Virus record (IMG/VR): IMGVR_UViG_3300020178_000002
Coordinates: 248,001-312,000 of that record
Length of the DNA: 64,000 bases
Direction: 5' to 3' (one strand)
Under the pieces are notes generated by a model, which was not told where the DNA came from, made no database searches, and worked only from the letters and a program-made list of their open reading frames with translations. Each line of letters begins with the position of its first letter. Position 1 is the first letter of the stretch. A program made the translations under genes and the position numbers. Shown piece by piece: positions 30,284 through 62,839 of the stretch.

Positions 30284-30339
30284 AGATTACTCCTTAAAAA
30301 ATGACTCTAATTTAATAAACGTGTTCTATATAAACACTA

Positions 30340-37401: not shown

Positions 37402-38358
37402 ATGAATAAGGTAAGAGCTTCTTTTCTAAACCTGGTAGAGGAAAAAGGCGGTTTTGTGTGCCATCACGCACACTTTGATAAATCTCATTTAATAACCCCA
37501 GAGATTCTGAGAAAAAGTCAATCTAGCCTTCAAGAAAAGTGGTACATATACAGAGACTTGAAAGAATCTTACACTAGGGAAGATCTAAGACTTCGTATGG
37601 TTCGATGTATTGAAAAAATGCGATCTCAAGGTGTTAACAAATGTAAAACCTTCATAGATGCAGACCAGATTGTAGGTTTGACTCCTATGGAAGTTGCTGT
37701 TGAGCTAAAGAAAGAGTACTCAGCTAAAGGCTTTGATCTGCTTCTGGCAGTTCAGCCTCTTGAGGGAGTTCTAAATCCTTTTGCTAGAGAGATTTTTGTT
37801 AAAGCCTGTGGAATGGCTGACGTTGTTGGAGGTCTTCCAGATAGAGACAAAGAGCCACTATCTCATATGGACTTTATTTTAAGCCTAGCAAAAGATTTAG
37901 GCAAAGACCTTGATGTTCATGTTGGTCAAAACAACATACCCTCTGAACAAGAATCCGAGATGGTTGTTGATAAAGTTAAAGAGCATAACATGGAGGGTAG
38001 AGTGAACTTGGTTCATGCAATCTCTTTATCTTGCCAAACCAAAAGCAAGAGGAAAGAGGTTATACAAAAGATTAAAGATACCAATACAGGTGTGATTGTG
38101 TGCCCCTCTGCTGCAATAAGTATGAAGCAACAATCTAATGTTTCCGCCCCTATCCATAATTCCATAGCTCCTGTCTTAGAAATGCTTGAAGCTGGTGTAG
38201 ATGTAATGTTAGGTGTGGATAACATACATGACCTATTCATGCCTTTGGTTGATGGAGACCTATGGTTTGAGTGTAGGCTGATGATGGAAGCAATAAGATG
38301 CTATGACTTGGAACTGATTTCTAAAATAGCTTCAAATAAAAGAGGTTTTAATGATTAA
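37402..38358 (+). CDS. Metal-dependent amidohydrolase, cytosine deaminase-like
   Basis: HHAHFDK, DVHV, VHAIS, IVCP and GVDNIHD metal-ligand pattern of the CodA family; exact substrate uncertain. Confidence 0.75.
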   Translation: MNKVRASFLNLVEEKGGFVCHHAHFDKSHLITPEILRKSQSSLQEKWYIYRDLKESYTREDLRLRMVRCIEKMRSQGVNKCKTFIDADQIVGLTPMEVAVELKKEYSAKGFDLLLAVQPLEGVLNPFAREIFVKACGMADVVGGLPDRDKEPLSHMDFILSLAKDLGKDLDVHVGQNNIPSEQESEMVVDKVKEHNMEGRVNLVHAISLSCQTKSKRKEVIQKIKDTNTGVIVCPSAAISMKQQSNVSAPIHNSIAPVLEMLEAGVDVMLGVDNIHDLFMPLVDGDLWFECRLMMEAIRCYDLELISKIASNKRGFND

Positions 38359-39592: not shown

Positions 39593-40806
39593 GTACAACG
39601 GCAGTTATAGGTGGTCAATGGGGTGATGAGGGTAAAGGTAAGATTGTTGACTTTCTTTCAGAAGGTGCAGACTATTGTGTTCGCTTTCAAGGTGGCAGTA
39701 ATGCAGGTCATACTATCACAGTAAACGATCAAGTGTATAAGCTCAGATTATTGCCCTCAGGAGTCCTTAGAGGTTCAACGGGTGTTCTTGGTGCTGGTAT
39801 GGTTATAAACCTTGATGTGCTTCAATCTGAAGTCTCTTATCTACAAGAAAGAGGGATAGAGCCAAAGTTCTTTATTGATCATAGAGCACATCTTGTCACT
39901 CCAGAGCATATTTCCAATGATGTTCTTCGAGAGAAAGAATCTGGAAACAGAATTGGCACTACAAGAAATGGTATTGGCCTTTGTTATGAAGATAAAGCAA
40001 GAAGAACAGGTCTTCGTGCAGGAGATCTACTAACAGACTTTGATTCTAAGGTAGATGCCTTTCTTAAGTTTTATGATAACAGCCCTCGTGTTAAGTTAGG
40101 TCTGGTGAAAGTTTTGAATGAGTGGAAAGACACTTGGTCTAAATACATTCGTACAGACCTCACAGATGTTCTATATAGAGCAATGCATATAGAAGATAAG
40201 GAAGTTGTTATTGAAGGGGCACAGGGGACTCTCTTGGATGTTTCACATGGAACATATCCTTTCGTTACATCTTCTCATACAATAGCCCCAAGCATTGCAG
40301 CAGGAGTAGGTGCTTCTTTACCAAGAGACTATAACTGCATTGGTGTTTTTAAAGCATACTGCACTAGAGTTGGCAAAGGGGGCTTCCCATCAGAAGATTT
40401 TACAGAAGATGGAGATGCTTTACAGAGAATCGGTAAAGAGGTAGGTGTTGTCACAAAGAGAGTTAGAAGATGTGGCTGGCTTAACCTTGATGATATGATT
40501 TATGCGAACCAGCTTAATGGCTTCACTTCAATTGTTTTAACAAAAGTGGATGTCTTAGATGGATTCTCTAAAGTTAAAGTAATGTATAAGGGTGATTTGC
40601 AAACTCTAGATGGTTGGGCAGGTTCAGGAGATGCCAAAACTTGGCTTGAGCTACCAGAGAATCTTATGAAGTTTATTGATTACATTCAAGAGAAAACAGG
40701 TGTTTCAGTTACCATGATTTCTAATGGTCCAGATCGCAAGGACACAATAATGCACCCTTTTTTAACTATGCCAAAACTTGAAACCACACCTAGCATGGAG
40801 CTTTAA
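39589..40806 (+). CDS. purA: Adenylosuccinate synthetase
   Basis: [38 protein letters not shown] and RRCGW. Confidence 0.96.
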
Positions 40807-45509: not shown

Positions 45510-45525
45510 CTAGGTGTCCTTTCGT

Positions 45526-46638
45526 ATGATTAAAAAAGTATGTGTTGGTTTAGATCTTCCTATTAATAGTTCTTTAGAAGACTATATAAAAATTATTAAC
45601 GAGGTTGGCTCTACAAGCTACAAAGTCAACCCTGCCTTTGTATCGCCCCATATAATGCCATTGCTTGCTTCTGAACTCAATATAAGGGGCTTCTTTTGGA
45701 TATATGATGGTAAGCTGGGTGATGTTCCTCATACAAATGAGAGATATGCAGATTATGTATTCAATCAGCTAGGTGCAAATGCAGTCACCTTAAATCCTTT
45801 TGTTGGTCTGGAGGCACTTGAGCCTTTCTTTCAATATGAAGATAGATACTCTTTTGTTCTTTGTAAAACTACCAACTCTGGAGATAAAAAAGCTCAGTCT
45901 GCTATGTATACAGACATAATTTCTTTAGCTTCCGAGAGAAGCAATGTAGGTATTGTCTACTCGTCACTAGATTCTGAGGGTTTGAGAGCAGTATCAGAAG
46001 GCAACTTTTTGATACTTGCACCTGGAGTGGGCTCACAAGGTGGCTCTGCTGCAGTAGATGAGTTGAATATTCTTTATACAGTAAGTAGGACTATAATAAA
46101 TTCACCTGACCCCCGTGAGACTTATCTTGAAATCAAAGGTGGTGTTGAAGCTATTCTCTTAGAGAGTTTGAGGTCTAGGGGTTTCATTAAAGAAGGTCAG
46201 TTTACACTTTCAAGTGGTCTTTCTTCTAACTACTATATTGACTTAAGGTGTCTTTCTTCTGACATAGACTTCTACCAAGAGGTATGTTTGCTTTTGTCTA
46301 GGCAAATAAAAACCCCTGATATACTAGGTGTCGAGAGTGGAAGCATATCTCTAGCTTCTTCTCTTGCTTGTCTTCTAGATAAACCTTTTGGTTTTGTTAG
46401 AAAGACTGCAAAGTCACATGGTACATCAAGGGTTGTTGAGGGTATCTCAGAGGGAGAAGCAACAGTTGTAGATGATGTTTTAACAACTGGTAGTAGTCTT
46501 ATAAAGGCTGTTTTAAATGCTAGAGCCTCTGGTATCTATGTCAGTGAAGTTTTAGTTGTAATAGAAAGAGTTGGTTATGGTGGTAGAGAAGCTCTTGAGA
46601 GTTATGGTATTAAAGTCAATTCTTTAGCGAGACTTTAG
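45526..46638 (+). CDS. pyrFE: Fused OMP decarboxylase + orotate phosphoribosyltransferase (PyrF-PyrE)
   Basis: OMPDC motifs DGKLGDVPHT, AVTLNPFVG and LAPGVGSQGG; OPRT motifs FTLSSG..SNYYIDLR, VRKxxKxHG and VVDDVLTTGSS. Start is 45514 or 45526. Confidence 0.9.
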   Translation: MIKKVCVGLDLPINSSLEDYIKIINEVGSTSYKVNPAFVSPHIMPLLASELNIRGFFWIYDGKLGDVPHTNERYADYVFNQLGANAVTLNPFVGLEALEPFFQYEDRYSFVLCKTTNSGDKKAQSAMYTDIISLASERSNVGIVYSSLDSEGLRAVSEGNFLILAPGVGSQGGSAAVDELNILYTVSRTIINSPDPRETYLEIKGGVEAILLESLRSRGFIKEGQFTLSSGLSSNYYIDLRCLSSDIDFYQEVCLLLSRQIKTPDILGVESGSISLASSLACLLDKPFGFVRKTAKSHGTSRVVEGISEGEATVVDDVLTTGSSLIKAVLNARASGIYVSEVLVVIERVGYGGREALESYGIKVNSLARL

Positions 46639-52792: not shown

Positions 52793-53100
52793 AGATTCTA
52801 AAAAGATATGAAATCCCTTTAGATGATGTAAACGAAATTATGATGAACATAGAGTCATACCAGAGAATGCTAAATTTTTATGGGGAGTGGGTGGAGAAGC
52901 ATGGGGAATATGATTATGTAGACGAGAGGGTTCGAGACCTATCTGGCATTCTCTGTGAGTATTTGATTGCAAGAGAATATGTAAAAGAGGGTGCGAGGAC
53001 ATTTGGTGATGATAAGACAGTTTATGCATCTGTTGAGTTGGAGTTTAAAAAGAAGTACCCAAATCTCGAATACCCTTTTTCAAAGGTTTCAGGCAAATGA
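52789..53100 (+). CDS. Hypothetical protein
   Basis: 103-aa ORF with overlapping start/stop on both sides. Confidence 0.55.
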   Translation: MKILKRYEIPLDDVNEIMMNIESYQRMLNFYGEWVEKHGEYDYVDERVRDLSGILCEYLIAREYVKEGARTFGDDKTVYASVELEFKKKYPNLEYPFSKVSGK

Positions 53101-53744
53101 TTATTACAATATTAAGAAAGCCTTTAGAGGGAAGCGTAGCTGATAATGTACTTAAACATGGTTGTGGTGCTTTAAACATAGATGCGTCAAGAGTTTCCTC
53201 TCACGACAAAACAAAAAACCACAGTCGCAAGCCAGAGGCTTCTAAACCAAAAGGCATTTATGGAGACTCAAAAGAACAAGAGACACATCAGACAAAGGGT
53301 CAAGAGATTGGTAGGTTTCCTGCTAACTTTATTCTGACTCACCGAGAGGGCTGTGAGTTAAAAGGCACTAAGAAAATTAAAAGTTCTTCTGGAAGAGGTG
53401 CTGTGAAAAAAGAGTCCTCTGCTGAAAAGTTGGGTAATCAAGGATATTCTTACTCTAAAGAGTCAAGAAAAGAAGGTACTGTTATGATTTGTCATGTAGA
53501 TGAAGATGGGAAAGAGACAGTAGCAGATTGGGCTTGTGTAGAGGGTTGTCCTGTTAAAGAGATAGATCGACAAAGTGGTTCGATAAAGAGTGGTGGTCGC
53601 TCTGCCAAAAACTACGCAGACAGCGATTCTGATCGGCTTGTCTATGGAGGGTTCTCTGGAGTGGCGAAAGAAATACAGCCCTCAAGTGGTGGTGCTTCTA
53701 GGTTCTTTAAACAGTTTAAGAAAGAAGAATCAAATGAACCCTAA
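53097..53744 (+). CDS. DNA methyltransferase middle subunit, copy 1
   Basis: RKPLEGSVADNVLKHGCGALNID...GRFPAN...GGASRFF, the central blocks of phage beta-class N4/N6 MTases. Confidence 0.75.
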   Translation: MIITILRKPLEGSVADNVLKHGCGALNIDASRVSSHDKTKNHSRKPEASKPKGIYGDSKEQETHQTKGQEIGRFPANFILTHREGCELKGTKKIKSSSGRGAVKKESSAEKLGNQGYSYSKESRKEGTVMICHVDEDGKETVADWACVEGCPVKEIDRQSGSIKSGGRSAKNYADSDSDRLVYGGFSGVAKEIQPSSGGASRFFKQFKKEESNEP

Positions 53745-54186
53745 GCATCTTTCTGTAAGAGTGAAGCAATGTGACCTCATAGCTTCAAACTCTCCCTGTC
53801 CAAGAAGAAAAGTAGGTGCTCTTATCATAGACCCAGATAACAATGTTGTTATTAGTGAGGGGTATAATGGTACTCCTAGAAGTTCTGATAAGCAGTATTG
53901 TGGTGGCTCTGTCTGTAGAAGGACAGAGGATAATATAAAGAGTGGTACTAGGAATGATGTTGGATGTCACCACGCTGAAATGAATGCAATACTAAATGCA
54001 ACTAGGGTAGGGCAGTCTACTCTAGGTAAATGGTTAATTGTAAACTGTGACCCTTGTCTCATGTGTGCAAAAGCAATTCACCACAGTGGGATAGTGAGAG
54101 TTTACTGTCCTAAAGAGTTCTCTGGGAATCATAAAGAAGGTCTAAAATATCTTCTTGAAAACAGTATTGAGGTAGAAGATTTATGA
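53734..54186 (+). CDS. dCMP deaminase
   Basis: CPRRKVGA, GYNG, HAEMNA and PCLMCAK; start MNPKHL. Confidence 0.9.
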   Translation: MNPKHLSVRVKQCDLIASNSPCPRRKVGALIIDPDNNVVISEGYNGTPRSSDKQYCGGSVCRRTEDNIKSGTRNDVGCHHAEMNAILNATRVGQSTLGKWLIVNCDPCLMCAKAIHHSGIVRVYCPKEFSGNHKEGLKYLLENSIEVEDL

Positions 54187-54302
54187 GTAAAGTAGTTATT
54201 TGCAAAAGATGTGGCAAAGACTTAAAATATGGCTGGAAATGTTCTGCAAGACCTGATTTGTCTTGTGTTCCTTATTCTAAATACTTAGAGGGTAAGCCAT
54301 GA
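54183..54302 (+). CDS. Small Cys4 peptide (39 aa), not in ORF track
   Basis: MSKVVICKRCGKDLKYGWKCSARPDLSCVPYSKYLEGKP*; ATGA overlaps at both ends. Confidence 0.5.
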   Translation: MSKVVICKRCGKDLKYGWKCSARPDLSCVPYSKYLEGKP

Positions 54303-54979
54303 GGGTAGTTTGTATTTCAGATACTCATAATCAGCATGATAAAATAGATCTTCCAGATGGGGATGTTTTAATCCATGCTGGTGATTGGACAGGTACAGGA
54401 ACTCAGAGACAAGTTATAAGCTTTATTCGCTGGTTTGCTAGTCAACCTCATAAGCATAAGATACTTATTGCAGGAAACCATGAAGTAACTATGGACACTG
54501 ATTTCTATAAGCAAGCATGGCCTTCTTTTCATAAGGAACAGCTTCCTTATCAAGATATTAAAGATTATGTCTTGAGAGAAGAAGATATTTTCTACTTAGA
54601 AAATAGTGAAGTTGTGATAGAGGGTGTTAAATTTTATGGGAGTCCTTATCAACCTGCTTTTGGTGGCTGGGCTTTTGGTGCTAATAGAGGATTTGAAACA
54701 AAGTCTACTTGGTCTAAGATACCAGAAGATACAGATGTTCTTATTACTCATGGACCACCTAAAGATATAGGAGATAGGTTAGAGATTGGTGACTGTGTTG
54801 GGTGTGAGGATCTTCTTTATAGGATAAGAGAAGTTAAACCCTCACTTCACATCTTTGGTCATATACATGAGGGGTATGGTGAATATAAAATTGGAGATAC
54901 TGTCTTTTTAAATGCTTCGATCTGTGATGAAAACTATAAGTTGACAAATAAACCTTTAGAATGGGAGTTGGATAAGTGA
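54299..54979 (+). CDS. Metallophosphoesterase (calcineurin-like, MPPED/239FB-type)
   Basis: CISDTH, HAGD, IAGNHE, LITHGPP and HIFGHIHE. Confidence 0.9.
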   Translation: MRVVCISDTHNQHDKIDLPDGDVLIHAGDWTGTGTQRQVISFIRWFASQPHKHKILIAGNHEVTMDTDFYKQAWPSFHKEQLPYQDIKDYVLREEDIFYLENSEVVIEGVKFYGSPYQPAFGGWAFGANRGFETKSTWSKIPEDTDVLITHGPPKDIGDRLEIGDCVGCEDLLYRIREVKPSLHIFGHIHEGYGEYKIGDTVFLNASICDENYKLTNKPLEWELDK

Positions 54980-55593
54980 TTATTACAATATTAAGAAAGC
55001 CTTTAGAGGGGAGTGTGGCAGATAATGTTTTAAAACATGGTTGTGGTGCATTGAATATAGATGCTTCTAGGATTAGTACCTCTGACAACCTCAATGGCGG
55101 AGCTTATGCTGAGTCTGCGAGTGAGAGACATGACGGAAAAGAGAACTGGAGGTATGAACGAGGTAAAGCAGGAGAGTATGAGCAACCGAAAGGCAGGTGG
55201 CCTGCTAACTTTATCCTCATGCATAAAGAGGGTTGTGAGTTAAAAGGAACTAAGAAAGTAAAGTCGAATGGTCATTGGACTCAAAAAGCAAATATTGGGA
55301 AGTTCTATGAGGGGGGTTGGAATCATCAAGAAATAGATGAGGGGAACAAGATGTCTGATGAAGATGGGAAAGAGGCTGTAGCAGATTGGGCTTGTGTAGA
55401 GGGTTGTCCTGTTCAGAGTTTAGATGCCCAAACAGGCATCTTGCGTAGTGGCAAAGATGTAAATCCAACAACTTCAAAAGTTAGTGGCTTTTTTGGTCAA
55501 ACAGATAACTACTATTCGGCAAAGTCGAATTATGGGGATAGCGGAGGTGCTTCTAGGTTCTTCAAGCAATTCAAGAAAGGAAATGAAAAATGA
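54976..55593 (+). CDS. DNA methyltransferase middle subunit, copy 2
   Basis: Same conserved blocks as copy 1 with different linkers; GTG start. Confidence 0.75.
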   Translation: MIITILRKPLEGSVADNVLKHGCGALNIDASRISTSDNLNGGAYAESASERHDGKENWRYERGKAGEYEQPKGRWPANFILMHKEGCELKGTKKVKSNGHWTQKANIGKFYEGGWNHQEIDEGNKMSDEDGKEAVADWACVEGCPVQSLDAQTGILRSGKDVNPTTSKVSGFFGQTDNYYSAKSNYGDSGGASRFFKQFKKGNEK

Positions 55594-56132
55594 TAGAGAT
55601 TAAAATAGGTGATTGCACCGAAAGACTAAAAGATTTAGAGGACAACTCAGTTGATGCTGTTATATCAGACCCTCCTTATGGGCTTAAATTTATGTCTAAG
55701 GGCTGGGATGATATAGGTGATGGCAGCCAGCAAAGAGAATGGCACAGAAAGTGGCTTACAGAGGCATACAGAGTTCTTAAGCCTAATGGAGTTATTAAAG
55801 CTTTCTCTGGGTCGAGAACTTTCCACCATCTGATAGCAATGATGGAAGAGATAGGGTTTGAAGACTTAAAAGTGGAGTCTTGGAGTTATGGTTCAGGTTT
55901 TCCTAAGTCTCACAATGTGAGCAAAGCGATAGATAAGTTAGGTGGTCGTCAATATAAGGCAATACCTGCTTCTGGTGTAGGGTTTATGAACTCAGATAAA
56001 GAGAACTGGAATGCTTGTCACAACCAACTCATTCCTGTCTCAGAAGAAACAGAAGAAGCTAAAGTTTGGAATGGTTGGGGTACGGCTCTTAAACCTTCAT
56101 GGGAGCCTGTCTGTGTTGGAGTTAAGAAATGA
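55590..56132 (+). CDS. DNA N4/N6 methyltransferase N-terminal (DPPY catalytic) subunit
   Basis: GDC...VDAVISDPPYG, RVLKP, WSYGSGFPKS and GWGTALKPSWEP; no SAM-binding motif I. Confidence 0.85.
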   Translation: MIEIKIGDCTERLKDLEDNSVDAVISDPPYGLKFMSKGWDDIGDGSQQREWHRKWLTEAYRVLKPNGVIKAFSGSRTFHHLIAMMEEIGFEDLKVESWSYGSGFPKSHNVSKAIDKLGGRQYKAIPASGVGFMNSDKENWNACHNQLIPVSEETEEAKVWNGWGTALKPSWEPVCVGVKK

Positions 56133-56734
56133 TTATTACAATATTAAGAAAGCCCCTAGAAGGGAGCGTAGCAGATAATGTGCTGAAACATGGATGTGGT
56201 GCTTTGAACATAGATGCCACTAGGATTGGTTTAGAGACTATGGTTTCTAGGTCTATGGGTAGTCTAGGGGTTATGCACGATGATAATTGGGAATCTAAAC
56301 CTATTGAAGCTAAAGAAGCCACAGGCAGGTGGCCTGCTAACTTTATCCTCATGCATAAAGAGGGTTGTGAGTTAAAAGGCTCTAAAAAAATTAAAGAGGG
56401 CAAAGCTAATAAAGATAAGGGTGGCTCATTTAGAGAAGTGGGTCTTTATGAAGATGGGTTGAAGACTAGAGCTGTAGACCATTTTCAAGGAGAAGAAGAG
56501 ATAGAAGATTGGGCTTGTGTAAAGGATTGTCCTATTAGGAAACTAGACCTGCAAAGTGGTCAAGTCAAAGGTTGGTCGAGTCAAAACCATAATACTTTTA
56601 ATCCATATCAAGGAAACTCGTTCCACAACTCGTCAACCCAAAGACAAGGATATAAAGAGGGGTATAACGATGATGGAGGGGCTTCTCGGTTCTTCAAGCA
56701 ATTTAAGAAAGGTAATGAAAAATGGAAGATATGA
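56129..56734 (+). CDS. DNA methyltransferase middle subunit, copy 3
   Basis: Same conserved blocks; lies in colinear position between the N and C subunits. Confidence 0.75.
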   Translation: MIITILRKPLEGSVADNVLKHGCGALNIDATRIGLETMVSRSMGSLGVMHDDNWESKPIEAKEATGRWPANFILMHKEGCELKGSKKIKEGKANKDKGGSFREVGLYEDGLKTRAVDHFQGEEEIEDWACVKDCPIRKLDLQSGQVKGWSSQNHNTFNPYQGNSFHNSSTQRQGYKEGYNDDGGASRFFKQFKKGNEKWKI

Positions 56735-57495
56735 TTGAGTATTTTAAAGTAATGATAACCCCACCTGTAGAAGAGCCTATTATCTTAGTAGGTAAGCCCT
56801 CTGAGATTGATTATACCAGCTTCATGGCTTTAGAGGGGGCTTCCATCGTTCCCATATATAACCCATCTGTACATGGGATCATTTTACTTGGAGAACCCAC
56901 AGAGGAAGAATCGAGTTTAATCAATGAGATTCTACTTCCAGGTGCTCATGTTATTCTTATCCCAGAAGATATTGGATATAAGGGTGTTATCTCCCTTGAA
57001 GACAAGGGTGGTTTAGAAGTTAGAGATGCCATTTTTGTAGCAGACGAGAACTCAGAGTTCTGCTATACTTCTAAAGCAAGTAGAGGTGAGCGAGAAGCAG
57101 GTCTTTCTAACTTCGATGAGAAAGAGGGTCATGGTACATTTAGGGCAACTAGAGATCAAGCTATGCTAACAGGTTCTGGTAATGTTAGGGACAACAAGCG
57201 TAAGAATATCCATCCTACTGTTAAGCCAATAGAGATAATGGAATGGTGTGCTAGAGATATAGAACCTAGCTCTACTGTTGTAGACCCTTTTATGGGGTCT
57301 GGAACAACAGGTATCGCTATGTCTAAACTACACCATGACTTTGTAGGGATAGAGCTTAATCCTGAATATGCTAAAATATGTGAGGCGAGGATGAAGTATT
57401 GGAAACCTGTGGACACAAAGATTATTTCAGAGAACCCTGTCGAAGAAGAAGACCAACAGGTCTTCACAGGGCAAGTTTCTCTATTTGACTTTTAG
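56722..57495 (+). CDS. DNA methyltransferase C-terminal (SAM-binding) subunit
   Basis: FCYTSKASxxERxxGL, NIHPTVKP, VVDPFMGSGTTG and FVGIELNPEY. Confidence 0.85.
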   Translation: MEDMIEYFKVMITPPVEEPIILVGKPSEIDYTSFMALEGASIVPIYNPSVHGIILLGEPTEEESSLINEILLPGAHVILIPEDIGYKGVISLEDKGGLEVRDAIFVADENSEFCYTSKASRGEREAGLSNFDEKEGHGTFRATRDQAMLTGSGNVRDNKRKNIHPTVKPIEIMEWCARDIEPSSTVVDPFMGSGTTGIAMSKLHHDFVGIELNPEYAKICEARMKYWKPVDTKIISENPVEEEDQQVFTGQVSLFDF

Positions 57496-58769
57496 TAGAG
57501 GTTACGCTCAAAACGTGCAGCTACTCTTTCTGCTAGCATTTCTTCTTGAGATGCTTTGCGAAGCAGGAGCTTCTTCACAGATCGACCAAGACTCATATCC
57601 ATCTTTGTGGCTCTGTCGGTCTTTATTCCTCTTAGGTTAACCTTTGTGAGGTCAACACCTGTAAGGTCAGCACCATGTAGAGTAGCACCTGTAAGGTCAG
57701 CACCAGAAAGGTCTACATTTCTAAGATCAGTTCCTGTCAGATCAGCATCTTTTAGAGTAGCACCTTTTAAAGATTTTGCCTTTGAAAGGTCAGCATACTC
57801 TAGGCTAGCACCAGAAAGGTCAGCACCAGAAAGATCAGATCTTTCAAAGTCAGCACCAGAAAGGTCAGCTCCTTTTAAAGATGTTCCTGAGAATACAACT
57901 TCTGTAAAGTCACAATTAGAGAGATTAGCTCTGTCAAGAACAGCAGCACTAAAGTCTGACCCTGTAAAGTCTACACCAATAGCTTTGCAACCAGAAAAAT
58001 CAGCACCATTGAACTTGGTGTTCTTTACATCAGAAGCATCAGCAAATTTCCCTCCCACATACTTAATGCCTGCAAGATTGCATCTTGTAAAGGTTGTTCC
58101 TTCTAGACCATCTTCGTCAGTAATGGTGATGCCTTTTAAGTGGGTTGAAATTAGAGTAGAGTCTTTAAAAGAAGCTATTTCATCTACTCCTGTAAATTTA
58201 ACTCCTGTTAAAATGTTGTCTTGGAACTCTACACCTAAGAGATTAGCACTTGTAAAGTCTGTGGCAGTTATACCATCTGCGTTTGTAAAATCAGCACCGA
58301 TTAAAGTAGCTTTTGTAAAATCTGTTCCAGTTAAGCAACTTAGTTGTAAGTTAGCACCTGTTAGGTTAGCACCTTTAAAGTCACTACCTTTTAGATTTGC
58401 ACCTTCAAAATCAGCTCTGAGTAGTTTAAACCCAGCAAAGTTTGATAGCTCAATCTCGGATTCTTGGAAATTTGTGTGGCTCAGATCATTTTTCGGAATA
58501 CCAAGGCTAGTAAAGTCTGTCTGGTTGAAGTTTATTTCAGAAAGATCTTTATTCTTCAGTACTCCAGCCACAGATTTAATGTCGTCAGGATAGCTGTTTA
58601 AGTATTCTTTGACTTTACCGCCTTCGAGAGCTTTTTGATAAGCTTCATCTTTTTCTCGGAATTCTTTTAGCTCTTTGCCTTGAAGAGCTGGTTCAGCAGC
58701 ATACATTCTCTCCATATATGCTTTTCTTTTCATTCTCATACGAGCTTCGTAATATGATCTTCTTCTCAT
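57492..58769 (-). CDS. Pentapeptide-repeat protein with basic terminal tags
   Basis: Long ADLSG/ANLTG runs; N-terminus KRKAY, C-terminus RKASQEEMLAERVAARF. Confidence 0.9.
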   Translation of the reverse strand: MRRRSYYEARMRMKRKAYMERMYAAEPALQGKELKEFREKDEAYQKALEGGKVKEYLNSYPDDIKSVAGVLKNKDLSEINFNQTDFTSLGIPKNDLSHTNFQESEIELSNFAGFKLLRADFEGANLKGSDFKGANLTGANLQLSCLTGTDFTKATLIGADFTNADGITATDFTSANLLGVEFQDNILTGVKFTGVDEIASFKDSTLISTHLKGITITDEDGLEGTTFTRCNLAGIKYVGGKFADASDVKNTKFNGADFSGCKAIGVDFTGSDFSAAVLDRANLSNCDFTEVVFSGTSLKGADLSGADFERSDLSGADLSGASLEYADLSKAKSLKGATLKDADLTGTDLRNVDLSGADLTGATLHGADLTGVDLTKVNLRGIKTDRATKMDMSLGRSVKKLLLRKASQEEMLAERVAARFERNLY

Positions 58770-58869: not shown

Positions 58870-59058
58870 ATGATAGAAGTTATTAAAGATGTGCCTTTAA
58901 AGTGTTTTAATGATGGTAAGACATACCTTGTAAAAGCAGGTACTCAATTCCACATTGTTGAAAGAAAGGGTGTTTTTTACTTGAGATACAAGCACCTGTA
59001 CTTTACTTTTGTAGAAGGCACTGTAGCCAGAAACCCACGATTTTTTAAAAGTGTGTGA
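58870..59058 (+). CDS. Small hypothetical protein
   Basis: 62 aa; GGAG RBS; TTGATAAT upstream. Confidence 0.5.
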   Translation: MIEVIKDVPLKCFNDGKTYLVKAGTQFHIVERKGVFYLRYKHLYFTFVEGTVARNPRFFKSV

Positions 59059-59084
59059 AAAAGTTATATCTCACCCTCTATTAT

Positions 59085-59092
59085 TGTATAAT
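59085..59092 (+). promoter_or_regulatory. Sigma70-like -10 element driving tRNA units
   Basis: TGTATAAT 10 nt before the tRNA; the same 8-mer occurs at 59700 and 61092, and TATAAT at 61593. Confidence 0.6.
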
Positions 59093-59102
59093 ATAGATAT
59101 GT

Positions 59103-59176
59103 GGGCCTTTAGCTCAGTTGGTTAGAGCACCCGACTCATAATCGGGCGGTCCTGGGTTCAAGCCCCAGAGGGCCCA
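59103..59176 (+). tRNA. tRNA with CAT anticodon, probably tRNA-Ile2 (reads ATA after lysidine modification); CCA not encoded
   Basis: Full cloverleaf; anticodon arm CCCGA-CTCATAA-TCGGG; body resembles bacterial Ile2 tRNAs. Elongator Met is not excluded. Confidence 0.85.
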
Positions 59177-59182
59177 CTACAA

Positions 59183-59216
59183 AGGAAGCATCTTTATGAG
59201 GGCTTCCTTTTTTTTA
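59183..59216 (+). terminator. Intrinsic terminator
   Basis: AGGAAGC...GCTTCCT hairpin followed by a T run. Confidence 0.65.
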
Positions 59217-59232
59217 TCTTGAGGGATGTCAC

Positions 59233-59466
59233 ATGGGAAGTACTAAACTTGTTATAGAAGAAACCACAAATGGGTGGGTGGTCAAAACACTTGATTGTGA
59301 AGGTGTGGAGATTACCTATGTTTATGAAGACCTTGAGGGTACTGATTCTTCTAGGGCTAAGGCTTTCAAGAGGTTATTGTTTGAACACTTCTCCCATGTG
59401 TTTGCTAGTAAACGTAAAGCTGGGTTAGATGTTATGGTTCTGGAGAAAGGTTGGGGAGAAGTATGA
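59233..59466 (+). CDS. Hypothetical protein
   Basis: 77 aa; GAGGG RBS. Confidence 0.55.
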   Translation: MGSTKLVIEETTNGWVVKTLDCEGVEITYVYEDLEGTDSSRAKAFKRLLFEHFSHVFASKRKAGLDVMVLEKGWGEV

Positions 59467-59672
59467 AAAGGACTTTATTTATTAAAAAGAATGGTGCTGA
59501 GTTCTACAAGGAACTGAGTAAAGAAGAGAGGAGACAGAAAGTCATCTCTTTAGAGGTACAGAAGAAAACTACAGCAATGCAAGTAGCTAAAGACCCTATG
59601 CTTTTGTTTGGGTCTGCTGTTAAATACAAGCGTTGTGTTGAAGCTGGTTTCTTGAGCTTCAAAGAAATCTGA
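59463..59672 (+). CDS. Hypothetical protein
   Basis: Start MKRT overlaps the previous stop. Confidence 0.5.
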   Translation: MKRTLFIKKNGAEFYKELSKEERRQKVISLEVQKKTTAMQVAKDPMLLFGSAVKYKRCVEAGFLSFKEI

Positions 59673-59713
59673 AAAAACTCCTTGTTTTAGTCTCGGCTTT
59701 GTATAATAACTAT

Positions 59714-59987
59714 GTCGGTCATGTTAGACCTTTGTTCTTTGACATTTAGAACAACTCCTTAGGGAGGCTTCCTACAGGTAAAGCTGTTGGGTTGTGTGGT
59801 ATGCCCTTTCACCTCTTTGGTTAGGAGGTGTCTCCTGCTCTGTTGTTCCGTGGAGTGGGGCAAAACGGAACGCTTATCATATCTGATCTCTATTTGGTGA
59901 GATTTAGGGTTCGATTCCCACAGATGTGCTAGGCCCTCTTAAATTTAGCTCATTTTGAACGGTGTGTATCTAACTTTCGAGGGTCTA
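59714..59987 (+). ncRNA. Structured non-coding leader: several hairpins, a shortened tRNA-like element (59878-59929) and a stem-closed RNA (59930-59987)
   Basis: GTTCCGT/ACGGAAC; CATATCTG/CAGATGTG with a GGG-TTCGATT-CCC T-loop; TAGGCCCTC/GAGGGTCTA. Confidence 0.55.
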
Positions 59988-59993
59988 ATTTTT

Positions 59994-60066
59994 GCTGGTG
60001 TAGCTCAATTGGCAGAGCAACTGATTTGTAATCAGTAGGTTATGGGTTCAAGTCCCTTCACCAGCT
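59994..60066 (+). tRNA. tRNA-Thr(TGT)
   Basis: Cloverleaf; ACTGA-TTTGTAA-TCAGT; no CCA. Confidence 0.92.
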
Positions 60067-60071
60067 TTTTT

Positions 60072-60143
60072 GGGTTGTTAGCTCAATGGTAGAGCACACG
60101 ACTTTTAATCGTTAGGTTCTGGGTTCGAGTCCCAGACGACCCA
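60072..60143 (+). tRNA. tRNA-Lys(TTT)
   Basis: Cloverleaf; ACGA-CTTTTAA-TCGT; no CCA tail after the discriminator. Confidence 0.92.
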
Positions 60144-60190
60144 CTTTGAATTTTTGCTAAAGTCATCACGCTGGTTCAAGGATAATAATA

Positions 60191-60496
60191 ATGAGCGAGA
60201 AAAAAACATATACGATAAGAAGAAAATATGGTTGGGATGTTTACTCATACCATGTTGGTTGGAAAGAGATTGAGCTAACTGAGGAACAAATCGCAGAGGT
60301 TCGTGCTAATCCTGACTTGCTTGATGACGATGAATGGTTAGATAAAGCCTTTGATTGGGTTGATATGGATGAGGAGGAGTTGGTCACAGACTCTTGGTGT
60401 AAGGGTGGTGTTGACCAAATTCCCCTAGAGACTGAGATTGATTTCTACATTGAGGATCTTACAGGAGAAGAAGATGAGTCGGAAGATCAAGGTTAA
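60191..60496 (+). CDS. Acidic hypothetical protein, paralog 1
   Basis: LVTDSWCKGGVDQIP motif shared with the next gene. Confidence 0.65.
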   Translation: MSEKKTYTIRRKYGWDVYSYHVGWKEIELTEEQIAEVRANPDLLDDDEWLDKAFDWVDMDEEELVTDSWCKGGVDQIPLETEIDFYIEDLTGEEDESEDQG

Positions 60497-60800
60497 ATAC
60501 GAGTGGACCATCTGGGCTCACTACGAAGGGTATAAAGAGATTGATGTTGATGAACACCCAGAGCTTTTAGAGAAGATCAAAGACAACTTTGAATCTATCG
60601 AGGACTTACAAACCGACATGAATACATGGGACTATGTTTGTGAGGATATTTGTGAGATCGAAGGTGAACATCTTGTATCTGATGAATGGTGTAAGGGTGG
60701 GGTTAATCAGATGCCTTTCAAGGTTGAACTAACCAACATTGAATTTGATGAACTTTTACATCCAGAAGAGGATGAAGAAGATGATAAACCTAAAGGATAA
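60474..60800 (+). CDS. Acidic hypothetical protein, paralog 2
   Basis: LVSDEWCKGGVNQMP; start MSRKIK after AGGAG. Confidence 0.65.
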   Translation: MSRKIKVKYEWTIWAHYEGYKEIDVDEHPELLEKIKDNFESIEDLQTDMNTWDYVCEDICEIEGEHLVSDEWCKGGVNQMPFKVELTNIEFDELLHPEEDEEDDKPKG

Positions 60801-61069
60801 TGGTTATGGGTGAGAGAGAAGACTTGATTGAAAGATACAAGGAAGCAAACCTAAAGAGAATAAAATATGGCTTTTTGAGTGCTATCTGTTTTCCTGTTGG
60901 GTTTCACTTGATTTTAATCATAAGTCATATTTTAGATATTGATCTTTTGTTTCCCATACTCTTTTTTATTGTTCTTCCTGTTTCTCAAATAGCTTTTATA
61001 GCTTTATGGTTTAGTAATCATACTCACCAGAGTGATTTAGAAGCAAGGATAAAAATAAAGTCAAAATAA
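60800..61069 (+). CDS. Two-TM membrane protein
   Basis: Two hydrophobic stretches in 89 aa. Confidence 0.55.
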   Translation: MVMGEREDLIERYKEANLKRIKYGFLSAICFPVGFHLILIISHILDIDLLFPILFFIVLPVSQIAFIALWFSNHTHQSDLEARIKIKSK

Positions 61070-61147
61070 TTGTTGGCTTCTAGTCCTTTATTGTATAATA
61101 CATACATGAGCTTGCCTTATAGCTTAATATTAAAGGCAACTCTTTAA

Positions 61148-61219
61148 GCATCAGTAGCTCAGTGGAAGAGCAGTGGCCTTCTAAGCCATTGGTCGTAGGT
61201 TCAAATCCTACCTGATGTA
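61148..61219 (+). tRNA. tRNA-Arg(TCT)
   Basis: Cloverleaf; GTGGC-CTTCTAA-GCCAT. Confidence 0.92.
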
Positions 61220-61221
61220 CT

Positions 61222-61298
61222 CGACAAAGCTCTCTCCCAGTATTTAAGGTTGGATTTAAGTCCTGTTAGACATGTTGAACAGCATTGGGGCTTTGTCG
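61222..61298 (+). ncRNA. Stem-closed structured spacer RNA
   Basis: 11-bp stem CGACAAAGCTC/GGGCTTTGTCG fills almost the whole inter-tRNA spacer. Confidence 0.5.
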
Positions 61299-61303
61299 TA
61301 CTT

Positions 61304-61376
61304 GCACTCATAGCTCAGTTGGAAGAGCACCACTTTCCTAAAGTGGGGGTCGCAGGTTCAAGCCCTGCTGGGTGTA
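61304..61376 (+). tRNA. tRNA-Arg(CCT)
   Basis: Cloverleaf; CCACT-TTCCTAA-AGTGG. Confidence 0.92.
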
Positions 61377-61377
61377 C

Positions 61378-61452
61378 TAGGTTCTCTATATTTTTTTGTA
61401 GTTTACAAGAAGCGAGAAAGAATAACTTTGCTAGAGTTGTTTAGAGAACCTA
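61378..61452 (+). ncRNA. Three-way-junction spacer RNA
   Basis: Perfect 11-bp stem TAGGTTCTCTA/TAGAGAACCTA enclosing two hairpins. Confidence 0.5.
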
Positions 61453-61458
61453 ACTTAT

Positions 61459-61500
61459 ACACTTGTTAGGTTTTTGCAGGTTCGAGTCCTGTCAAGTGTT
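61459..61500 (+). ncRNA. tRNA minihelix (acceptor stem + T arm only)
   Basis: ACACTTG-10 nt-GCAGG-TTCGAGT-CCTGT-CAAGTGT-T. Confidence 0.65.
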
Positions 61501-61503
61501 CTG

Positions 61504-61571
61504 GCTCTCCCCTACTTTATTTTTTAATCATTAGAGAAAATTAGGCAAAAGTAGAGGAGAGCTTTTTTTTT
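61504..61571 (+). terminator. Long stem-loop with T tract (terminator and/or small RNA)
   Basis: 14/15-bp stem GCTCTCCCCTACTTT/AAAGTAGAGGAGAGC followed by T9. Confidence 0.55.
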
Positions 61572-61626
61572 ATTTTTCCTTTCGTGTGTCGGTATAATTA
61601 AGTTGAGCATGTTGCTCAATCTCCAA

Positions 61627-61640
61627 ACACACACACACAC
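61627..61640 (+). repeat. (AC)7 dinucleotide run in a 5' UTR
   Basis: acacacacacacac immediately upstream of the AAAGGA RBS of 61658. Confidence 0.85.
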
Positions 61641-61657
61641 ATGAAAGGATATATCCT

Positions 61658-61861
61658 ATGGGAGATAATAAAAGGAACGCTTACGAGATCAGAGAGTCTC
61701 TTCTTGGTATGGCTATTGGCATTTTATCAGATCGAGATTCGAGACTGCGTGAGAATGAGTACTTGAAGCCAGAAGGCAATCGTCAGCCTGTTGAAGGTTA
61801 TGATGTTGATGAGGTTATCAAGATTGCTAATAAGCTAGACTCTTTTGTGAGTCAAAGTTAA
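61658..61861 (+). CDS. Small phage-type protein
   Basis: NAYEIRESLLGMA...DEVIKIANKLDSFVS pattern recalled from large phages; own -10 element and RBS. Confidence 0.65.
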   Translation: MGDNKRNAYEIRESLLGMAIGILSDRDSRLRENEYLKPEGNRQPVEGYDVDEVIKIANKLDSFVSQS

Positions 61862-61863
61862 TT

Positions 61864-61985
61864 ATATAAGTGCGGTGATAGCATACAGGGTTCTACTAAC
61901 TATTTTCGTATATACGACCCAGTGAGGAATAAGACAAGTTAGGAATACTCACTTACTTGCAGGTTTTAACCCTGCCACTTATATT
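61864..61985 (+). ncRNA. Enlarged tRNA-like RNA (acceptor-like stem + T-like arm, ~86-nt insert)
   Basis: ATATAAGTG/CACTTATAT stem stacked on GCAGG-TTTTAAC-CCTGC; internal stems TCGTA/TACGA and AGTGAG/CTCACT. Confidence 0.5.
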
Positions 61986-61994
61986 ACTAGCTTA

Positions 61995-62060
61995 CACCCC
62001 ACATGGTTTTCCATGTTAGCTAGGTTCAGGTCTTTTGTTGTTGTGATCTGAATTGGGGTG
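61995..62060 (+). ncRNA. Three-way-junction spacer RNA
   Basis: CACCCC/GGGGTG closes ACATGG/CCATGT and GTTCAGGTC/GATCTGAAT. Confidence 0.5.
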
Positions 62061-62065
62061 ACTAA

Positions 62066-62138
62066 GGACCATTCGTCTAGGGGTCTAGGACTCCAGCCTT
62101 TCACGCTGGCAACACGGGTTCAAATCCCGTATGGTTCA
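62066..62138 (+). tRNA. tRNA-Glu(TTC)
   Basis: Cloverleaf; CCAGC-CTTTCAC-GCTGG. Confidence 0.92.
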
Positions 62139-62141
62139 TTA

Positions 62142-62176
62142 AAGCCTTTCCTATTCTTAGGAAGGGCTTTTTTTTT
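62142..62176 (+). terminator. Intrinsic terminator
   Basis: AAGCCTTTCCTA-ttct-TAGGAAGGGCTT followed by a T run. Confidence 0.75.
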
Positions 62177-62251
62177 GGCTTGTGGAAGCCTAGCTTTTAT
62201 AAGTTAGGGTGGACTCACAGTGAGCCAAATACTTTAATAGGAGAAAAGATT

Positions 62252-62839
62252 ATGAATCTTGACATTGAAAATGGCACAATTATTACTTTCCATACACAAA
62301 GAGTTGGGAAGAAAGACTTAAAAAAAGATGGTGGGGTACATCGAGGTAGACACCATGTTAAAGTAACTATGCTTGTTGGAACAGACTATAAAACTGTCGC
62401 TGGTATTGACTTTATGAAGCTCTATGAGAAAAATCCTGATGACTACTACGACAAGTTTAATTCTATGGGCATTGTTGAAGACATGGACAAATGGGCATTT
62501 AGTTGTGCTTGGCACAGCAGAAGTCTTTATGAAGGGTTGTACGAAAGCTCAAGAGGCGAAAACACTTACAATAAGCATTTTGATGTTTATGACCCACATC
62601 CTTGTGGTGTTCGTGGTGTCCTAGTCCACAAAGAAACAGGAGGCATCTATCTTATGGGGATTTTAATCAATGAAGAGATTGTTGAAGAAGATCCTAATGG
62701 TGATGCAAGAAAGAGTACATACTCTAAAGAGCGTAAGATTGTTAGAGCTATCCAGAAAGAGTTTGGACTCGTTTCAGGTAAGTGGAGAAGCTATAAGCTT
62801 CCTGCTGGAACAACAATCAATGGTCTTGAAGCCAAATAG
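62252..62839 (+). CDS. Hypothetical protein
   Basis: Probable start MNLDIE after AGGAG. Confidence 0.6.
   Translation: MNLDIENGTIITFHTQRVGKKDLKKDGGVHRGRHHVKVTMLVGTDYKTVAGIDFMKLYEKNPDDYYDKFNSMGIVEDMDKWAFSCAWHSRSLYEGLYESSRGENTYNKHFDVYDPHPCGVRGVLVHKETGGIYLMGILINEEIVEEDPNGDARKSTYSKERKIVRAIQKEFGLVSGKWRSYKLPAGTTINGLEAK

What the first reader, a model, noticed from the sequence alone, without database searches (positions are those of the whole stretch)
59714..62176. tRNA-punctuated arrays of small structured RNAs
Seen: in three transcription units the spacers next to tRNAs or tRNA mimics are filled almost edge to edge by RNAs of about 58-77 nt closed by 6-15-bp stems: 59930-59987, 61222-61298, 61378-61452, 61504-61562 and 61995-62060. 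Most start 0-3 nt after a discriminator base, and those followed by a tRNA or mimic end 5-6 nt before it. Their sequences are unrelated but several form three-way junctions. The unit at 61.1-61.6 kb reads hairpin, tRNA, RNA, tRNA, RNA, minihelix, RNA, T-tract. Established: RNase P and 3' trimming release flanking RNA (mitochondrial punctuation, herpesviral tRNA-miRNA units, engineered tRNA-gRNA arrays). Inference: the phage uses tRNAs as processing signals to release a panel of stable sRNAs, such as decoys, antitoxin or anti-CRISPR RNAs, or regulators.
Basis: partly seen in the sequence, partly recalled or inferred. Interest (0 to 1): 0.75.

Follow-up and report, generated by a model that had tools for sequence, protein, structure and literature searches.

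The report
Structured RNAs interleaved with phage tRNAs
A 312-kb marine phage fills the gaps in its tRNA operons with conserved folded RNAs and stripped-down tRNA look-alikes placed where tRNA-cutting enzymes could excise each piece, but release and function remain untested.

Summary

Related marine phages add three points.
- The spacers are about as conserved as the tRNAs. They stay conserved even where flanking promoters and ORFs have been swapped.
- Stems change by compensatory substitutions.
- Three RNA classes recur in distant relatives:
  - a new pseudoknot RNA (window 59803-59871) lying just 5' of tRNAs or tRNA mimics in about half of the 18 distinct copies found;
  - a tRNA-like minihelix with no D arm (59878-59929);
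  - "trailer" RNAs that start right after the discriminator, usually with UAG, and are closed by 9-15-bp stems.

None matches Rfam. None fits the HDV-like (theta) ribozyme fold known next to phage tRNAs.

The tRNA-punctuation reading fits the anatomy: minihelices sit exactly between two non-tRNA RNAs. Cleavage, accumulation and any trans function are untested, and no antisense target was found in the window. 61504-61562 is also an intrinsic terminator.

Verdict: a real, conserved feature and a new variant of a known kind. Closest precedents are T4 RNA C/D, plant mitochondrial t-elements and MALAT1-mascRNA.

The parts
59699..59708 (+). TTGTATAATA -10 box, promoter of unit 1
   Evidence: The exact word occurs 4 times in the window, three of them just upstream of tRNA units. 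It is invariant in relatives.
59714..59802 (+). 5' part of the unit-1 leader, with several hairpins
   Evidence: Fold. The whole leader 59714-59876 is 92.6-94.5% identical in relatives.
59803..59871 (+). Pseudoknot RNA (PK-RNA). P0 is GCCC/GGGC, then a hairpin, then P1 CUCU/GGAG with loop GUUGUUCCGU, then an A-rich linker. The 3' tail CGGAAC pairs with GUUCCG in that loop.
   Evidence: 18 distinct copies in related phage loci, all on the tRNA strand. Covariation: 92.4% of cells paired, 6 pairs changed on both sides, score 0.254 against 0.164 in shuffles, 0 of 500. No Rfam match.
59878..59929 (+). tRNA-like minihelix A: 8-bp acceptor stem, 5-bp hairpin, 3-4-bp T stem with a UUCGAUU loop, then a discriminator. 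It has no D arm.
   Evidence: Fold. Model R2 finds it in L015, L018, L020, L025, L072, L074, L075, L036 and L041. The hairpin AUCUC/GAGAU becomes ACUCU/AGAGU in L018. Covariation score 0.295 against 0.199, 1 of 500. ARAGORN and Rfam do not call it a tRNA.
59930..59988 (+).
   Evidence: z -1.9 to -2.8. Homologues share the core GCUC..UUGAACGGUG but have different closing stems of 12-15 bp in L023, L025, L072 and L074.
59994..60144 (+). tRNA-Thr(UGU) and tRNA-Lys(UUU), 5 nt apart, no encoded CCA
61091..61143 (+). TTGTATAATA box and leader hairpin of unit 2
   Evidence: In L016-L019 this leader is replaced by unrelated sequence, and in L017 by a PK-RNA.
61148..61220 (+). tRNA-Arg(UCU)
61222..61298 (+). 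Spacer RNA 2: about 12-bp closing stem and two inner hairpins
   Evidence: z -2.3. It is retained with few changes in strains whose upstream region is unrelated. Substitutions in stems keep pairing (U-G to C-G, G-C to G-U) and the rest fall in unpaired parts.
61304..61377 (+). tRNA-Arg(CCU)
61378..61452 (+). Spacer RNA 3: three-way junction closed by UAGGUUCUCU/AGAGAACCUA
   Evidence: z -4.0. It is present in L020-L022. Together with minihelix B it is cleanly absent in L015-L019, as one module of about 125 nt.
61459..61500 (+). tRNA-like minihelix B: 7-bp acceptor and 5-bp T arm (UUCGAGU loop), preceded by CUUAU
   Evidence: Fold z -2.5. T-loop word. Weak R2 match, 17.8 bits. U to C in L020 turns G-U into G-C.
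61504..61571 (+).
   Evidence: z -4.0. The stem sequence differs with compensation among strains, while the loop TCATTAGAGAAAATTAGGCA is conserved. The environmental variant 61511 C>T repairs the C/A mismatch.
61658..61861 (+). ORF67, a conserved 67-aa helical protein co-transcribed with unit 3
   Evidence: More than 80 homologues. In most of the IMG/VR loci scanned, tRNAs lie within a few hundred bases of it. AF2 gives a helical hairpin with no fold match.
61865..61984 (+). Expanded tRNA-like element C: 7-8-bp acceptor, 5-bp T arm (UUUUAAC loop) and three inner hairpins
   Evidence: Fold. It is 97-100% identical in strains where the adjacent ORF67 is 88.7-95.6% identical. It is absent in L023 and L024.
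61995..62060 (+). Spacer RNA 4: three-way junction, 5 nt before tRNA-Glu
   Evidence: z -4.1. A homologue in L023 scores 63.5 bits with model R1. Two pairs changed on both sides and five on one side (four of the five in hairpin 2).
62066..62176 (+). tRNA-Glu(UUC) and the intrinsic terminator 62141-62176

Best explanation
These are short, sigma-70-type-promoter-driven tRNA operons of a roughly 312-kb marine (salt-marsh) phage. Conserved structured non-coding RNAs are interleaved in them with tRNAs and with non-decoding tRNA-like minihelices.

Each non-tRNA RNA is bounded by a tRNA, a tRNA mimic, the transcription start or a terminator. The host's tRNA-maturation enzymes can therefore cut the transcript into discrete pieces. 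RNase P would cut at the 5' side of every acceptor/T-arm stack. An RNase Z/BN-type activity would cut after every discriminator, because no tRNA here encodes CCA and nearly all trailers begin with U. Closing stems of 6-15 bp, and in the leader RNA a 3' pseudoknot, would protect the ends of those pieces.

Shown:
- the layout;
- better-than-shuffle folding;
- conservation equal to or above that of neighbouring genes;
- compensatory changes in stems;
- recurrence of three RNA classes (PK-RNA, minihelix, UAG-stem trailer) as a block in distant relatives.

Inferred:
- co-transcription;
- cleavage by RNase P and RNase Z;
- stability of the products;
- that the products act after release.

My best guess for their role is binding or decoying factors that recognise tRNA-like or specific loop sequences. 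I think antisense regulation is less likely.
For: Layout and folds.

The window is the end of a 312-kb contig that was found again in other samples.

Conservation:
- Spacer RNAs are 91-100% identical in strains where ORFs are 77-100% identical and whole genes are swapped.
- Spacer RNA 2 is retained behind four different upstream sequences.

Covariation:
- PK-RNA.
- Minihelix A.
- Spacer RNA 4.
- The terminator stem.
- Closing stems of trailer RNA 1 are entirely different in L023, L025 and L074 around a conserved core.

Evidence for punctuation:
- The T-loop word is confined to tRNAs and mimics.
- The same CUUAU leader precedes minihelix A, minihelix B, the L036 minihelices and the suppressor-type tRNAs of relatives.
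- Minihelices stand between PK-RNA and trailer 1, and between spacer RNA 3 and the terminator RNA.
- Mimic C stands between the ORF67 mRNA and spacer RNA 4.
- Spacer RNA 3 and minihelix B are gained or lost together.

RNA-library contigs bridge tRNA and spacer junctions (61160-61426 and 61952-62210). This is compatible with a common precursor.

Precedent: stable RNAs C and D of unknown function are made by T4 (PMC9697503), and sRNAs lie directly upstream of phage tRNAs in 201phi2-1 and PAK_P3 (PMC11512511).
Against: - There are no end-mapped reads. The RNA runs are assembled contigs at depths like those of the ORFs, and they may contain DNA.
- No complementarity above chance to anything in the 64 kb.
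- The host is unknown.
- In L023, spacer RNA 4 follows ORF67 with no mimic between them, so the punctuation rule is not universal.
- PK-RNA and the trailers flank ordinary tRNAs as well. That also fits a role confined to tRNA maturation.
- The conserved loop of the terminator hairpin contains a 10-bp-spaced direct repeat, ATTAG..ATTAG. It could therefore be a DNA-level protein site upstream of the ORF67 promoter.
Confidence: 0.5

Rival explanations
1. The structured spacers are cis-acting maturation cassettes and not products. The PK leader and the stem-closed trailers keep neighbouring tRNAs from misfolding. They present short single-stranded linkers to RNase P and RNase Z, and block exonucleases until cleavage. 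They are then degraded.
For: - PK-RNA always lies on the tRNA strand. In about half of the 18 copies it lies 4-7 nt (or 30 nt) upstream of a tRNA or minihelix 5' end.
- Trailers always begin right after a discriminator.
- Leader modules are interchangeable: a hairpin in the window, a PK-RNA in L017.
- In L041 a single spacer RNA serves as trailer of one tRNA and PK leader of the next.
- No trans target was found.
Against: - The block PK-RNA + minihelix + trailer is conserved although the minihelix decodes nothing. A maturation aid needs no dummy tRNA.
- Unpaired cores are conserved far beyond what generic insulation needs: GUUGUUCCGU, GCUC..UUGAACGGUG and the terminator loop.
- tRNA-Met, and the tRNA-Thr/tRNA-Lys pair (5 nt apart), do without such spacers.
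Confidence: 0.3
2. The trailers, or the PK-RNA, are self-cleaving ribozymes of an undescribed class that trim tRNA flanks. They would be functional analogues of the HDV-like theta ribozymes found within 5 nt of the ends of gut-phage tRNAs.
For: - The position is the same as that of theta ribozymes (PMC10879173).
- The trailers start at +1 or +2 after the discriminator.
- The unpaired nucleotides and the pseudoknot are highly conserved.
- The tRNAs lack an encoded CCA.
Against: - A descriptor for the HDV-like fold gave no hit at any spacer, and as many hits in the region as in shuffles.
- No ribozyme family of Rfam matched, even at E-values up to 10.
- The different trailers share no common core.
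- The distance from PK-RNA to the tRNA 5' end varies from 4 to 30 nt. That does not fit a structure-defined cleavage site.
Confidence: 0.06
3. The elements are decaying tRNA pseudogenes and neutral hairpins, or DNA-level elements such as protein sites and recombination scars, with no RNA function.
For: - The T arms of minihelix B and mimic C resemble that of the neighbouring tRNA-Arg-CCU (GCAGG...CCUGY), which suggests origin by duplication and internal deletion.
- Modules are gained and lost between strains.
- Phage tRNA arrays turn over quickly (established knowledge).
Against: - Compensatory changes keep the acceptor, hairpin and T stems of the minihelix in distant relatives.
- Mimic C is more conserved than the adjacent coding gene.
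- Spacer folds are better than shuffles.
- All copies lie on the transcribed strand.
Confidence: 0.08

Closest known systems
Phage T4 tRNA-region stable RNAs C and D (species 1 and 2)
   Same: Small stable non-coding RNAs encoded alongside the phage's own tRNAs. Their function is still unknown (PMC9697503). From my own knowledge, they are co-transcribed with the T4 tRNA cluster, and the CCA-less T4 tRNAs need RNase P and RNase BN.
   Different: Sequence relation was not tested. Here there are many more RNAs, plus dedicated non-decoding minihelices and a pseudoknot leader. The host and phage lineage are unrelated to T4.
tRNA punctuation, plant mitochondrial t-elements and MALAT1-mascRNA
   Same: tRNAs or tRNA-like stem-loops serve as cleavage signals that define the ends of adjacent non-tRNA RNAs. 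In MALAT1 a structure just upstream of the RNase P site protects the new 3' end, much as the PK-RNA tail might. This comparison rests on established knowledge and was not tested here.
   Different: Those systems are organellar or nuclear. Cleavage has not been demonstrated here. The flanked RNAs are small structured RNAs rather than mRNAs or lncRNAs, apart from the ORF67 mRNA upstream of mimic C.
HDV-like theta ribozymes next to gut-phage tRNAs (PMC10879173)
   Same: A structured RNA of about 60 nt begins within a few nucleotides of the 3' end of a phage tRNA, and is proposed to process the 3' trailer.
   Different: The defining nested double-pseudoknot fold with a catalytic C is absent at these spacers. 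There are no Rfam ribozyme hits. The setting is a marine jumbo phage rather than a gut phage.
sRNAs mapped directly upstream of phage tRNAs in 201phi2-1 and PAK_P3 (PMC11512511)
   Same: Small leader-derived RNA species lie next to a tRNA of a large phage, and their function is unknown.
   Different: Those were defined by transcript mapping, without a conserved structure. Here structure and conservation are shown but transcripts are not.
Gammaherpesvirus 68 tRNA-miRNA units and engineered tRNA-gRNA arrays
   Different: Those use eukaryotic pol III units or are synthetic designs. There is no homology.

Membership tests
Canonical tRNA (for the three mimics) | Cloverleaf with D arm and a 7-nt anticodon loop, detectable by ARAGORN or Rfam RF00005 | tested here: not met
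   Not called at default settings. Relaxed ARAGORN gives only poor, mismatched models. The best Rfam match is tRNA-Sec at 18 bits, against a cut-off of 47.
Canonical tRNA (for the three mimics) | Coaxial acceptor/T-stem stack of about 12 bp with a T-loop and a discriminator | tested here: met
   Mimic A has 8 + 3-4 bp, minihelix B 7 + 5 bp and mimic C 7-8 + 5 bp. The T-loop word is enriched 9 against 0.57 expected. Covariation.
HDV-like / theta ribozyme | Position within about 5 nt of a phage tRNA end | tested here: met
   Trailers start 0-3 nt after discriminators.
HDV-like / theta ribozyme | Nested double pseudoknot P1/P1.1/P2/P3(/P4) with a catalytic C in J4/2 | tested here: not met
   My own descriptor search of 59000-62400 gave 2 + 2 hits, none at a spacer. 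Shuffles gave 0-4. No Rfam HDV-type hit.
Intrinsic terminator (61504-61571 and 62141-62176) | Stable stem-loop followed by a U tract | tested here: met
   62141-62176 was found by the scan. 61504-61562 folds at -19.3 kcal/mol and is followed by T9. Its 29-nt loop is atypical for a terminator.
tRNA-punctuated processing (t-element type) | A tRNA or tRNA-like element on each side of the non-tRNA RNA | tested here: met
   True for all spacer RNAs of the window when the transcription start and the terminators are counted as boundaries. L023 shows one exception.
tRNA-punctuated processing (t-element type) | Cleavage by RNase P and RNase Z at those elements, giving discrete products | not testable with these tools
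   Only assembled RNA contigs were available and no ends were reported.
Base-pairing trans-acting sRNA | An accessible seed complementary to target mRNAs | tested here: inconclusive
   The longest complementarity to the 64-kb window is 10-13 nt, the same as for shuffles. The rest of the genome and the host were not available.
Any Rfam 15 family other than tRNA (riboswitches, pistol, preQ1 and others) | Score at or near the gathering threshold | tested here: not met
   Searches gave only tRNA hits above threshold.
T4 RNA C/D | Sequence or structure homology to T4 rnaC or rnaD | not tested
   No T4 locus was fetched. The resemblance is in genomic context only.

The most novel reading that the evidence does not exclude
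The phage lineage runs a natural array of small RNAs punctuated by tRNAs and by mini-tRNAs. Dedicated mini-tRNAs lacking the D arm, a pseudoknot RNA that caps the 3' end, and UAG-stem RNAs would all be released by the host's tRNA-processing enzymes. They would then act in trans. One possible role is as decoys for defence nucleases that target tRNAs or for tRNA-handling enzymes. This would be a bacterial-virus counterpart of mitochondrial punctuation and of the herpesviral tRNA-miRNA units.
Probability: 0.22. Interest if true: 0.85.

Novelty: new variant of a known kind. Interest (0 to 1): 0.62.

Why it matters
Phage tRNA clusters are usually annotated as tRNAs plus junk spacers. Here the spacers hold at least three conserved RNA classes with covariation support, and none of them is in Rfam.

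The non-decoding minihelices are best explained as processing signals or as tRNA decoys. If the pieces are released, that would show phages using tRNA maturation to make sets of small RNAs. It would also give a natural template for tRNA-based multiplexed RNA expression in bacteria.

The pseudoknot leader is a ready candidate for a new RNA family. Its likely partners, RNase P or a phage or host protein, can be tested directly.

Tried and rejected
- **Near relatives in GenBank phages.** None by DNA; only tRNA-to-tRNA hits. The closest relative, by terminase, is a 485-kb uncultured phage.
- **Relaxed ARAGORN** with introns or low thresholds gave only noise models.
- **Model R1 for spacer RNA 4** finds homologues only in close strains and in L023/L024, not in about 55 more distant loci.
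- **Collection scans.**
  - One scan was wasted on a mis-spaced pattern, N6 instead of N5.
  - The core of trailer 1 gave only chance hits in coding DNA.
That is about what chance predicts (roughly 26 and 156). Only 5 new hits (L087, L091, L095, L145, L166) show the P1 pairing. I read matching P0 stems in four of them (L087, L095, L145, L166).
- **Antisense targets.** None above shuffles. A first duplex-energy script timed out.
- **HDV-like fold.** Rejected. By eye I found no hammerhead core (CUGANGA...GAAA) in the three-way junctions.
- **ORF67 structure.** A helical hairpin with no informative PDB match. No Pfam or PHROG family for it or its small neighbours.
- **Metatranscriptome contigs** gave no end information and no excess depth over ORFs.
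- **attP-like tRNA fragments.** Rejected, because the mimics keep both acceptor strands and covary.
- **tmRNA, Y-RNA and preQ1/pistol readings.** Rejected for lack of any Rfam score.

Full report
**Source**

The window is the last 64 kb of IMG/VR contig 3300020178_000002 (312,136 bp). An identical stretch occurs in a second IMG/VR contig, and an ORF67 locus from a 312,414-bp JGI contig matches spacer RNA 4 with the same model score. The DNA is found in salt-marsh and marine metagenomes.

It is a jumbo phage of 37-41% G+C. It encodes a large terminase, two tail-fibre-like ORFs of about 2,300 aa, PhoH, PurA/PurB-type genes and other auxiliary genes. No close relative exists among deposited phage genomes.

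**The observation**

ARAGORN and Rfam agree on six tRNAs. None encodes CCA. Three units are delimited by an exact TTGTATAATA box and by terminators:
- The box stands at 59084 before tRNA-Met, at 59699 before unit 1 and at 61091 before unit 2.
- Unit 3 (ORF67, mimic C, spacer RNA 4, tRNA-Glu, terminator) has its own GGTATAAT box.

They have closing stems of 6-15 bp and z-scores of -1.9, -2.3, -4.0, -4.0 and -4.1 against dinucleotide shuffles.

The T-loop word GGTTCRANNCC is found 9 times against 0.57 expected. The hits are the six tRNAs, the two minihelices and one chance hit inside a small ORF. The minihelices and the 120-nt element C have acceptor plus T-stem stacks of 11-13 bp, but no D arm and no normal anticodon arm. 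No tRNA finder accepts them.

**Relatives**

I fetched loci through two neighbouring proteins, the 195-aa ORF at 62252 and the 67-aa ORF at 61658. They form a graded series:
- strains with the same tRNA order (L015-L022);
- an intermediate relative (L023/L024);
- many more distant marine phages.

Among the strains, genes are mosaic. Whole ORFs are replaced and promoter regions are unrelated. The spacer RNAs nevertheless persist at 91-100% identity. Mimic C is 97-100% identical, next to ORF67 at 88.7-95.6%.

Spacer RNA 3 and minihelix B are present or absent together as one module of about 125 nt.

Substitutions respect the folds:
- G-U to A-U in trailer 1.
- U-G to C-G and G-C to G-U in spacer RNA 2.
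- Two such one-sided changes in hairpin 2 of spacer RNA 3.
- G-U to G-C in minihelix B.
- Extensive compensation in the stem of the terminator hairpin, whose 20-nt loop core stays constant.
- An environmental variant (61511 C>T) closes the only mismatch of that stem.

Spacer RNA 4 has a homologue in L023 (63.5 bits). Two pairs are changed on both sides and five on one side, four of the five in hairpin 2.

**Three recurrent RNA classes**

*(a) PK-RNA.* A pseudoknot RNA was hidden in the unit-1 leader at 59803-59871.
- Its parts are a closing stem P0, a hairpin, and a 4-5-bp stem P1 whose loop reads GUUGUUCCGU. An A-rich linker follows, and then a tail CGGAAC that pairs with GUUCCG of that loop.
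- Eighteen distinct copies occur in the fetched loci, all on the tRNA strand.
- About half end 4-7 nt before a tRNA (Arg, Asn, Gly), 30 nt before a suppressor-type tRNA(CUA), or 6 nt before a minihelix. The rest have no tRNA or minihelix close downstream.
- On the alignment, 92.4% of cells pair and six pairs change on both sides. These include GUUCCG/CGGAAC to GUCCCG/CGGGAC.
- The covariation score is 0.254 against 0.164 in shuffles (0 of 500), and slid controls are far lower.

*(b) Minihelix A* (59878-59929).
- A covariance model finds it behind PK-RNAs in L015, L018, L020, L025, L072, L074, L075 and L036, and a weaker match in L041.
- Its acceptor and hairpin sequences differ among these copies, and its T-loop is conserved.

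*(c) Trailer RNAs.*
- They start at the nucleotide after the discriminator, often with UAGRYC.
- They are closed by 9-15-bp stems (z -2.7 to -6.3).
- The trailer 1 family keeps a core GCUC..UUGAACGGUG inside closing stems that are entirely different from one another.

In L041 a single spacer RNA is at once the trailer of one tRNA and the PK leader of the next. No Rfam family matches any of these RNAs.

**How it probably works**

The regularity that carries most weight is this: wherever two non-tRNA RNAs would be adjacent, a tRNA-like minihelix lies between them. This holds for PK-RNA and trailer 1, for spacer RNA 3 and the terminator RNA, and for the ORF67 mRNA and spacer RNA 4.

Minihelices A and B have the same CUUAU leader as real tRNAs of the lineage, and minihelix A the same U-initial trailer. 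From established knowledge, an acceptor/T-arm minihelix is sufficient for bacterial RNase P, and CCA-less precursors are cut after the discriminator by RNase Z/BN. A dummy tRNA is hard to explain if the only aim were to mature real tRNAs.

I therefore favour excision of discrete RNAs (confidence 0.5) over a purely cis maturation role (0.3).

The direct expression evidence is weak. RNA-library contigs bridge tRNA and spacer junctions (61160-61426 and 61952-62210). One contig of a variant strain ends at 61998. These are assembled contigs at ORF-like depth, possibly with DNA carry-over, and they carry no end information.

No antisense target stands out in the window.

**Comparison with known systems**

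- The nearest phage precedents are T4 RNAs C and D, still of unknown function, and the sRNAs seen upstream of tRNAs in 201phi2-1 and PAK_P3.
- HDV-like theta ribozymes lie within 5 nt of gut-phage tRNAs. They share the position but not the fold. A descriptor search found nothing at the spacers beyond what shuffles give.
- In logic, the arrangement resembles mitochondrial tRNA punctuation, plant t-elements and MALAT1-mascRNA.

I file it as a new variant of a known kind. Within it, the PK-RNA is a candidate new RNA family.

**Limits**

- Covariation rests on few, related sequences.
- The word-based collection scans returned about as many hits as chance predicts.
- The host is unknown.
- Cleavage, stability and function are all inferences.

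Noticed in passing
window 61658-61861 (ORF67): A 67-aa helical protein with more than 80 homologues. In most of the IMG/VR loci scanned, tRNAs lie within a few hundred bases of it. It has no Pfam, PHROG or PDB match. Its 5' UTR carries a conserved hairpin and a (CA)7 tract (61603-61640).
   Followed up: partly
L025 3096-3182; L072, L073, L074 and L075 (about 1681-2014): Relatives carry an 87-nt class-II-like tRNA with anticodon CUA (amber-suppressor type). In at least L025, L072 and L073 it lies 30 nt behind a PK-RNA. This hints at TAG recoding or suppression in part of this phage group. The window itself shows no such tRNA.
   Followed up: no
L023 2554-2705; L030 3752-3905: An RNA of about 150 nt with a tRNA-like acceptor, a D-like arm and a T arm (UUAGAAC or UUUAAAC loop), but a large multi-hairpin insert. 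It lies directly 5' of tRNA-Lys or tRNA-Glu. The acceptor stems covary between the two loci. It is analogous in position to mimic C of the window.
   Followed up: partly
window 60191-60800: Two paralogous small ORFs downstream of tRNA-Lys are replaced in an environmental variant by 387 unrelated nucleotides. In L018 a gene with an FGE-sulfatase domain stands there instead. This is a hot spot of gene exchange inside the tRNA region.
   Followed up: no
window 38351-40806 and 45514-46638: Adenylosuccinate lyase-like and adenylosuccinate synthetase genes. The best solved relatives are named adenylosuccinate synthetase, and no PurZ-named chain appears at E <= 1e-20. There is also an OMP-decarboxylase/phosphoribosyltransferase fusion. 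These are nucleotide-metabolism auxiliary genes.
   Followed up: partly
window 23249-37305, minus strand: Two adjacent giant ORFs of 2,344 and 2,321 aa with weak tail-fibre PHROG matches.
   Followed up: no
window 53095-56400: A run of similar ORFs of about 200 aa that share 57-91-nt segments 88-96% identical. This is a tandem paralogue family just upstream of the tRNA region.
   Followed up: no
window 57492-58769, minus strand: A 425-aa pentapeptide-repeat protein (Pfam E = 1e-59), encoded opposite to the surrounding genes.
   Followed up: no
L145 3805-3835; L166 686-716: Two MAG contigs labelled Gammaproteobacteria carry full PK-RNA-like architecture (P0, P1 and the pseudoknot tail). They may be phage DNA binned with a host, or a hint at the host group.
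   Followed up: no
window 61520-61545: The conserved loop of the terminator hairpin holds ATTAG twice, 10 bp apart, about 50-75 bp upstream of the ORF67 -10 box. It could be a DNA site for a regulator rather than an RNA seed, or as well as one.
   Followed up: no
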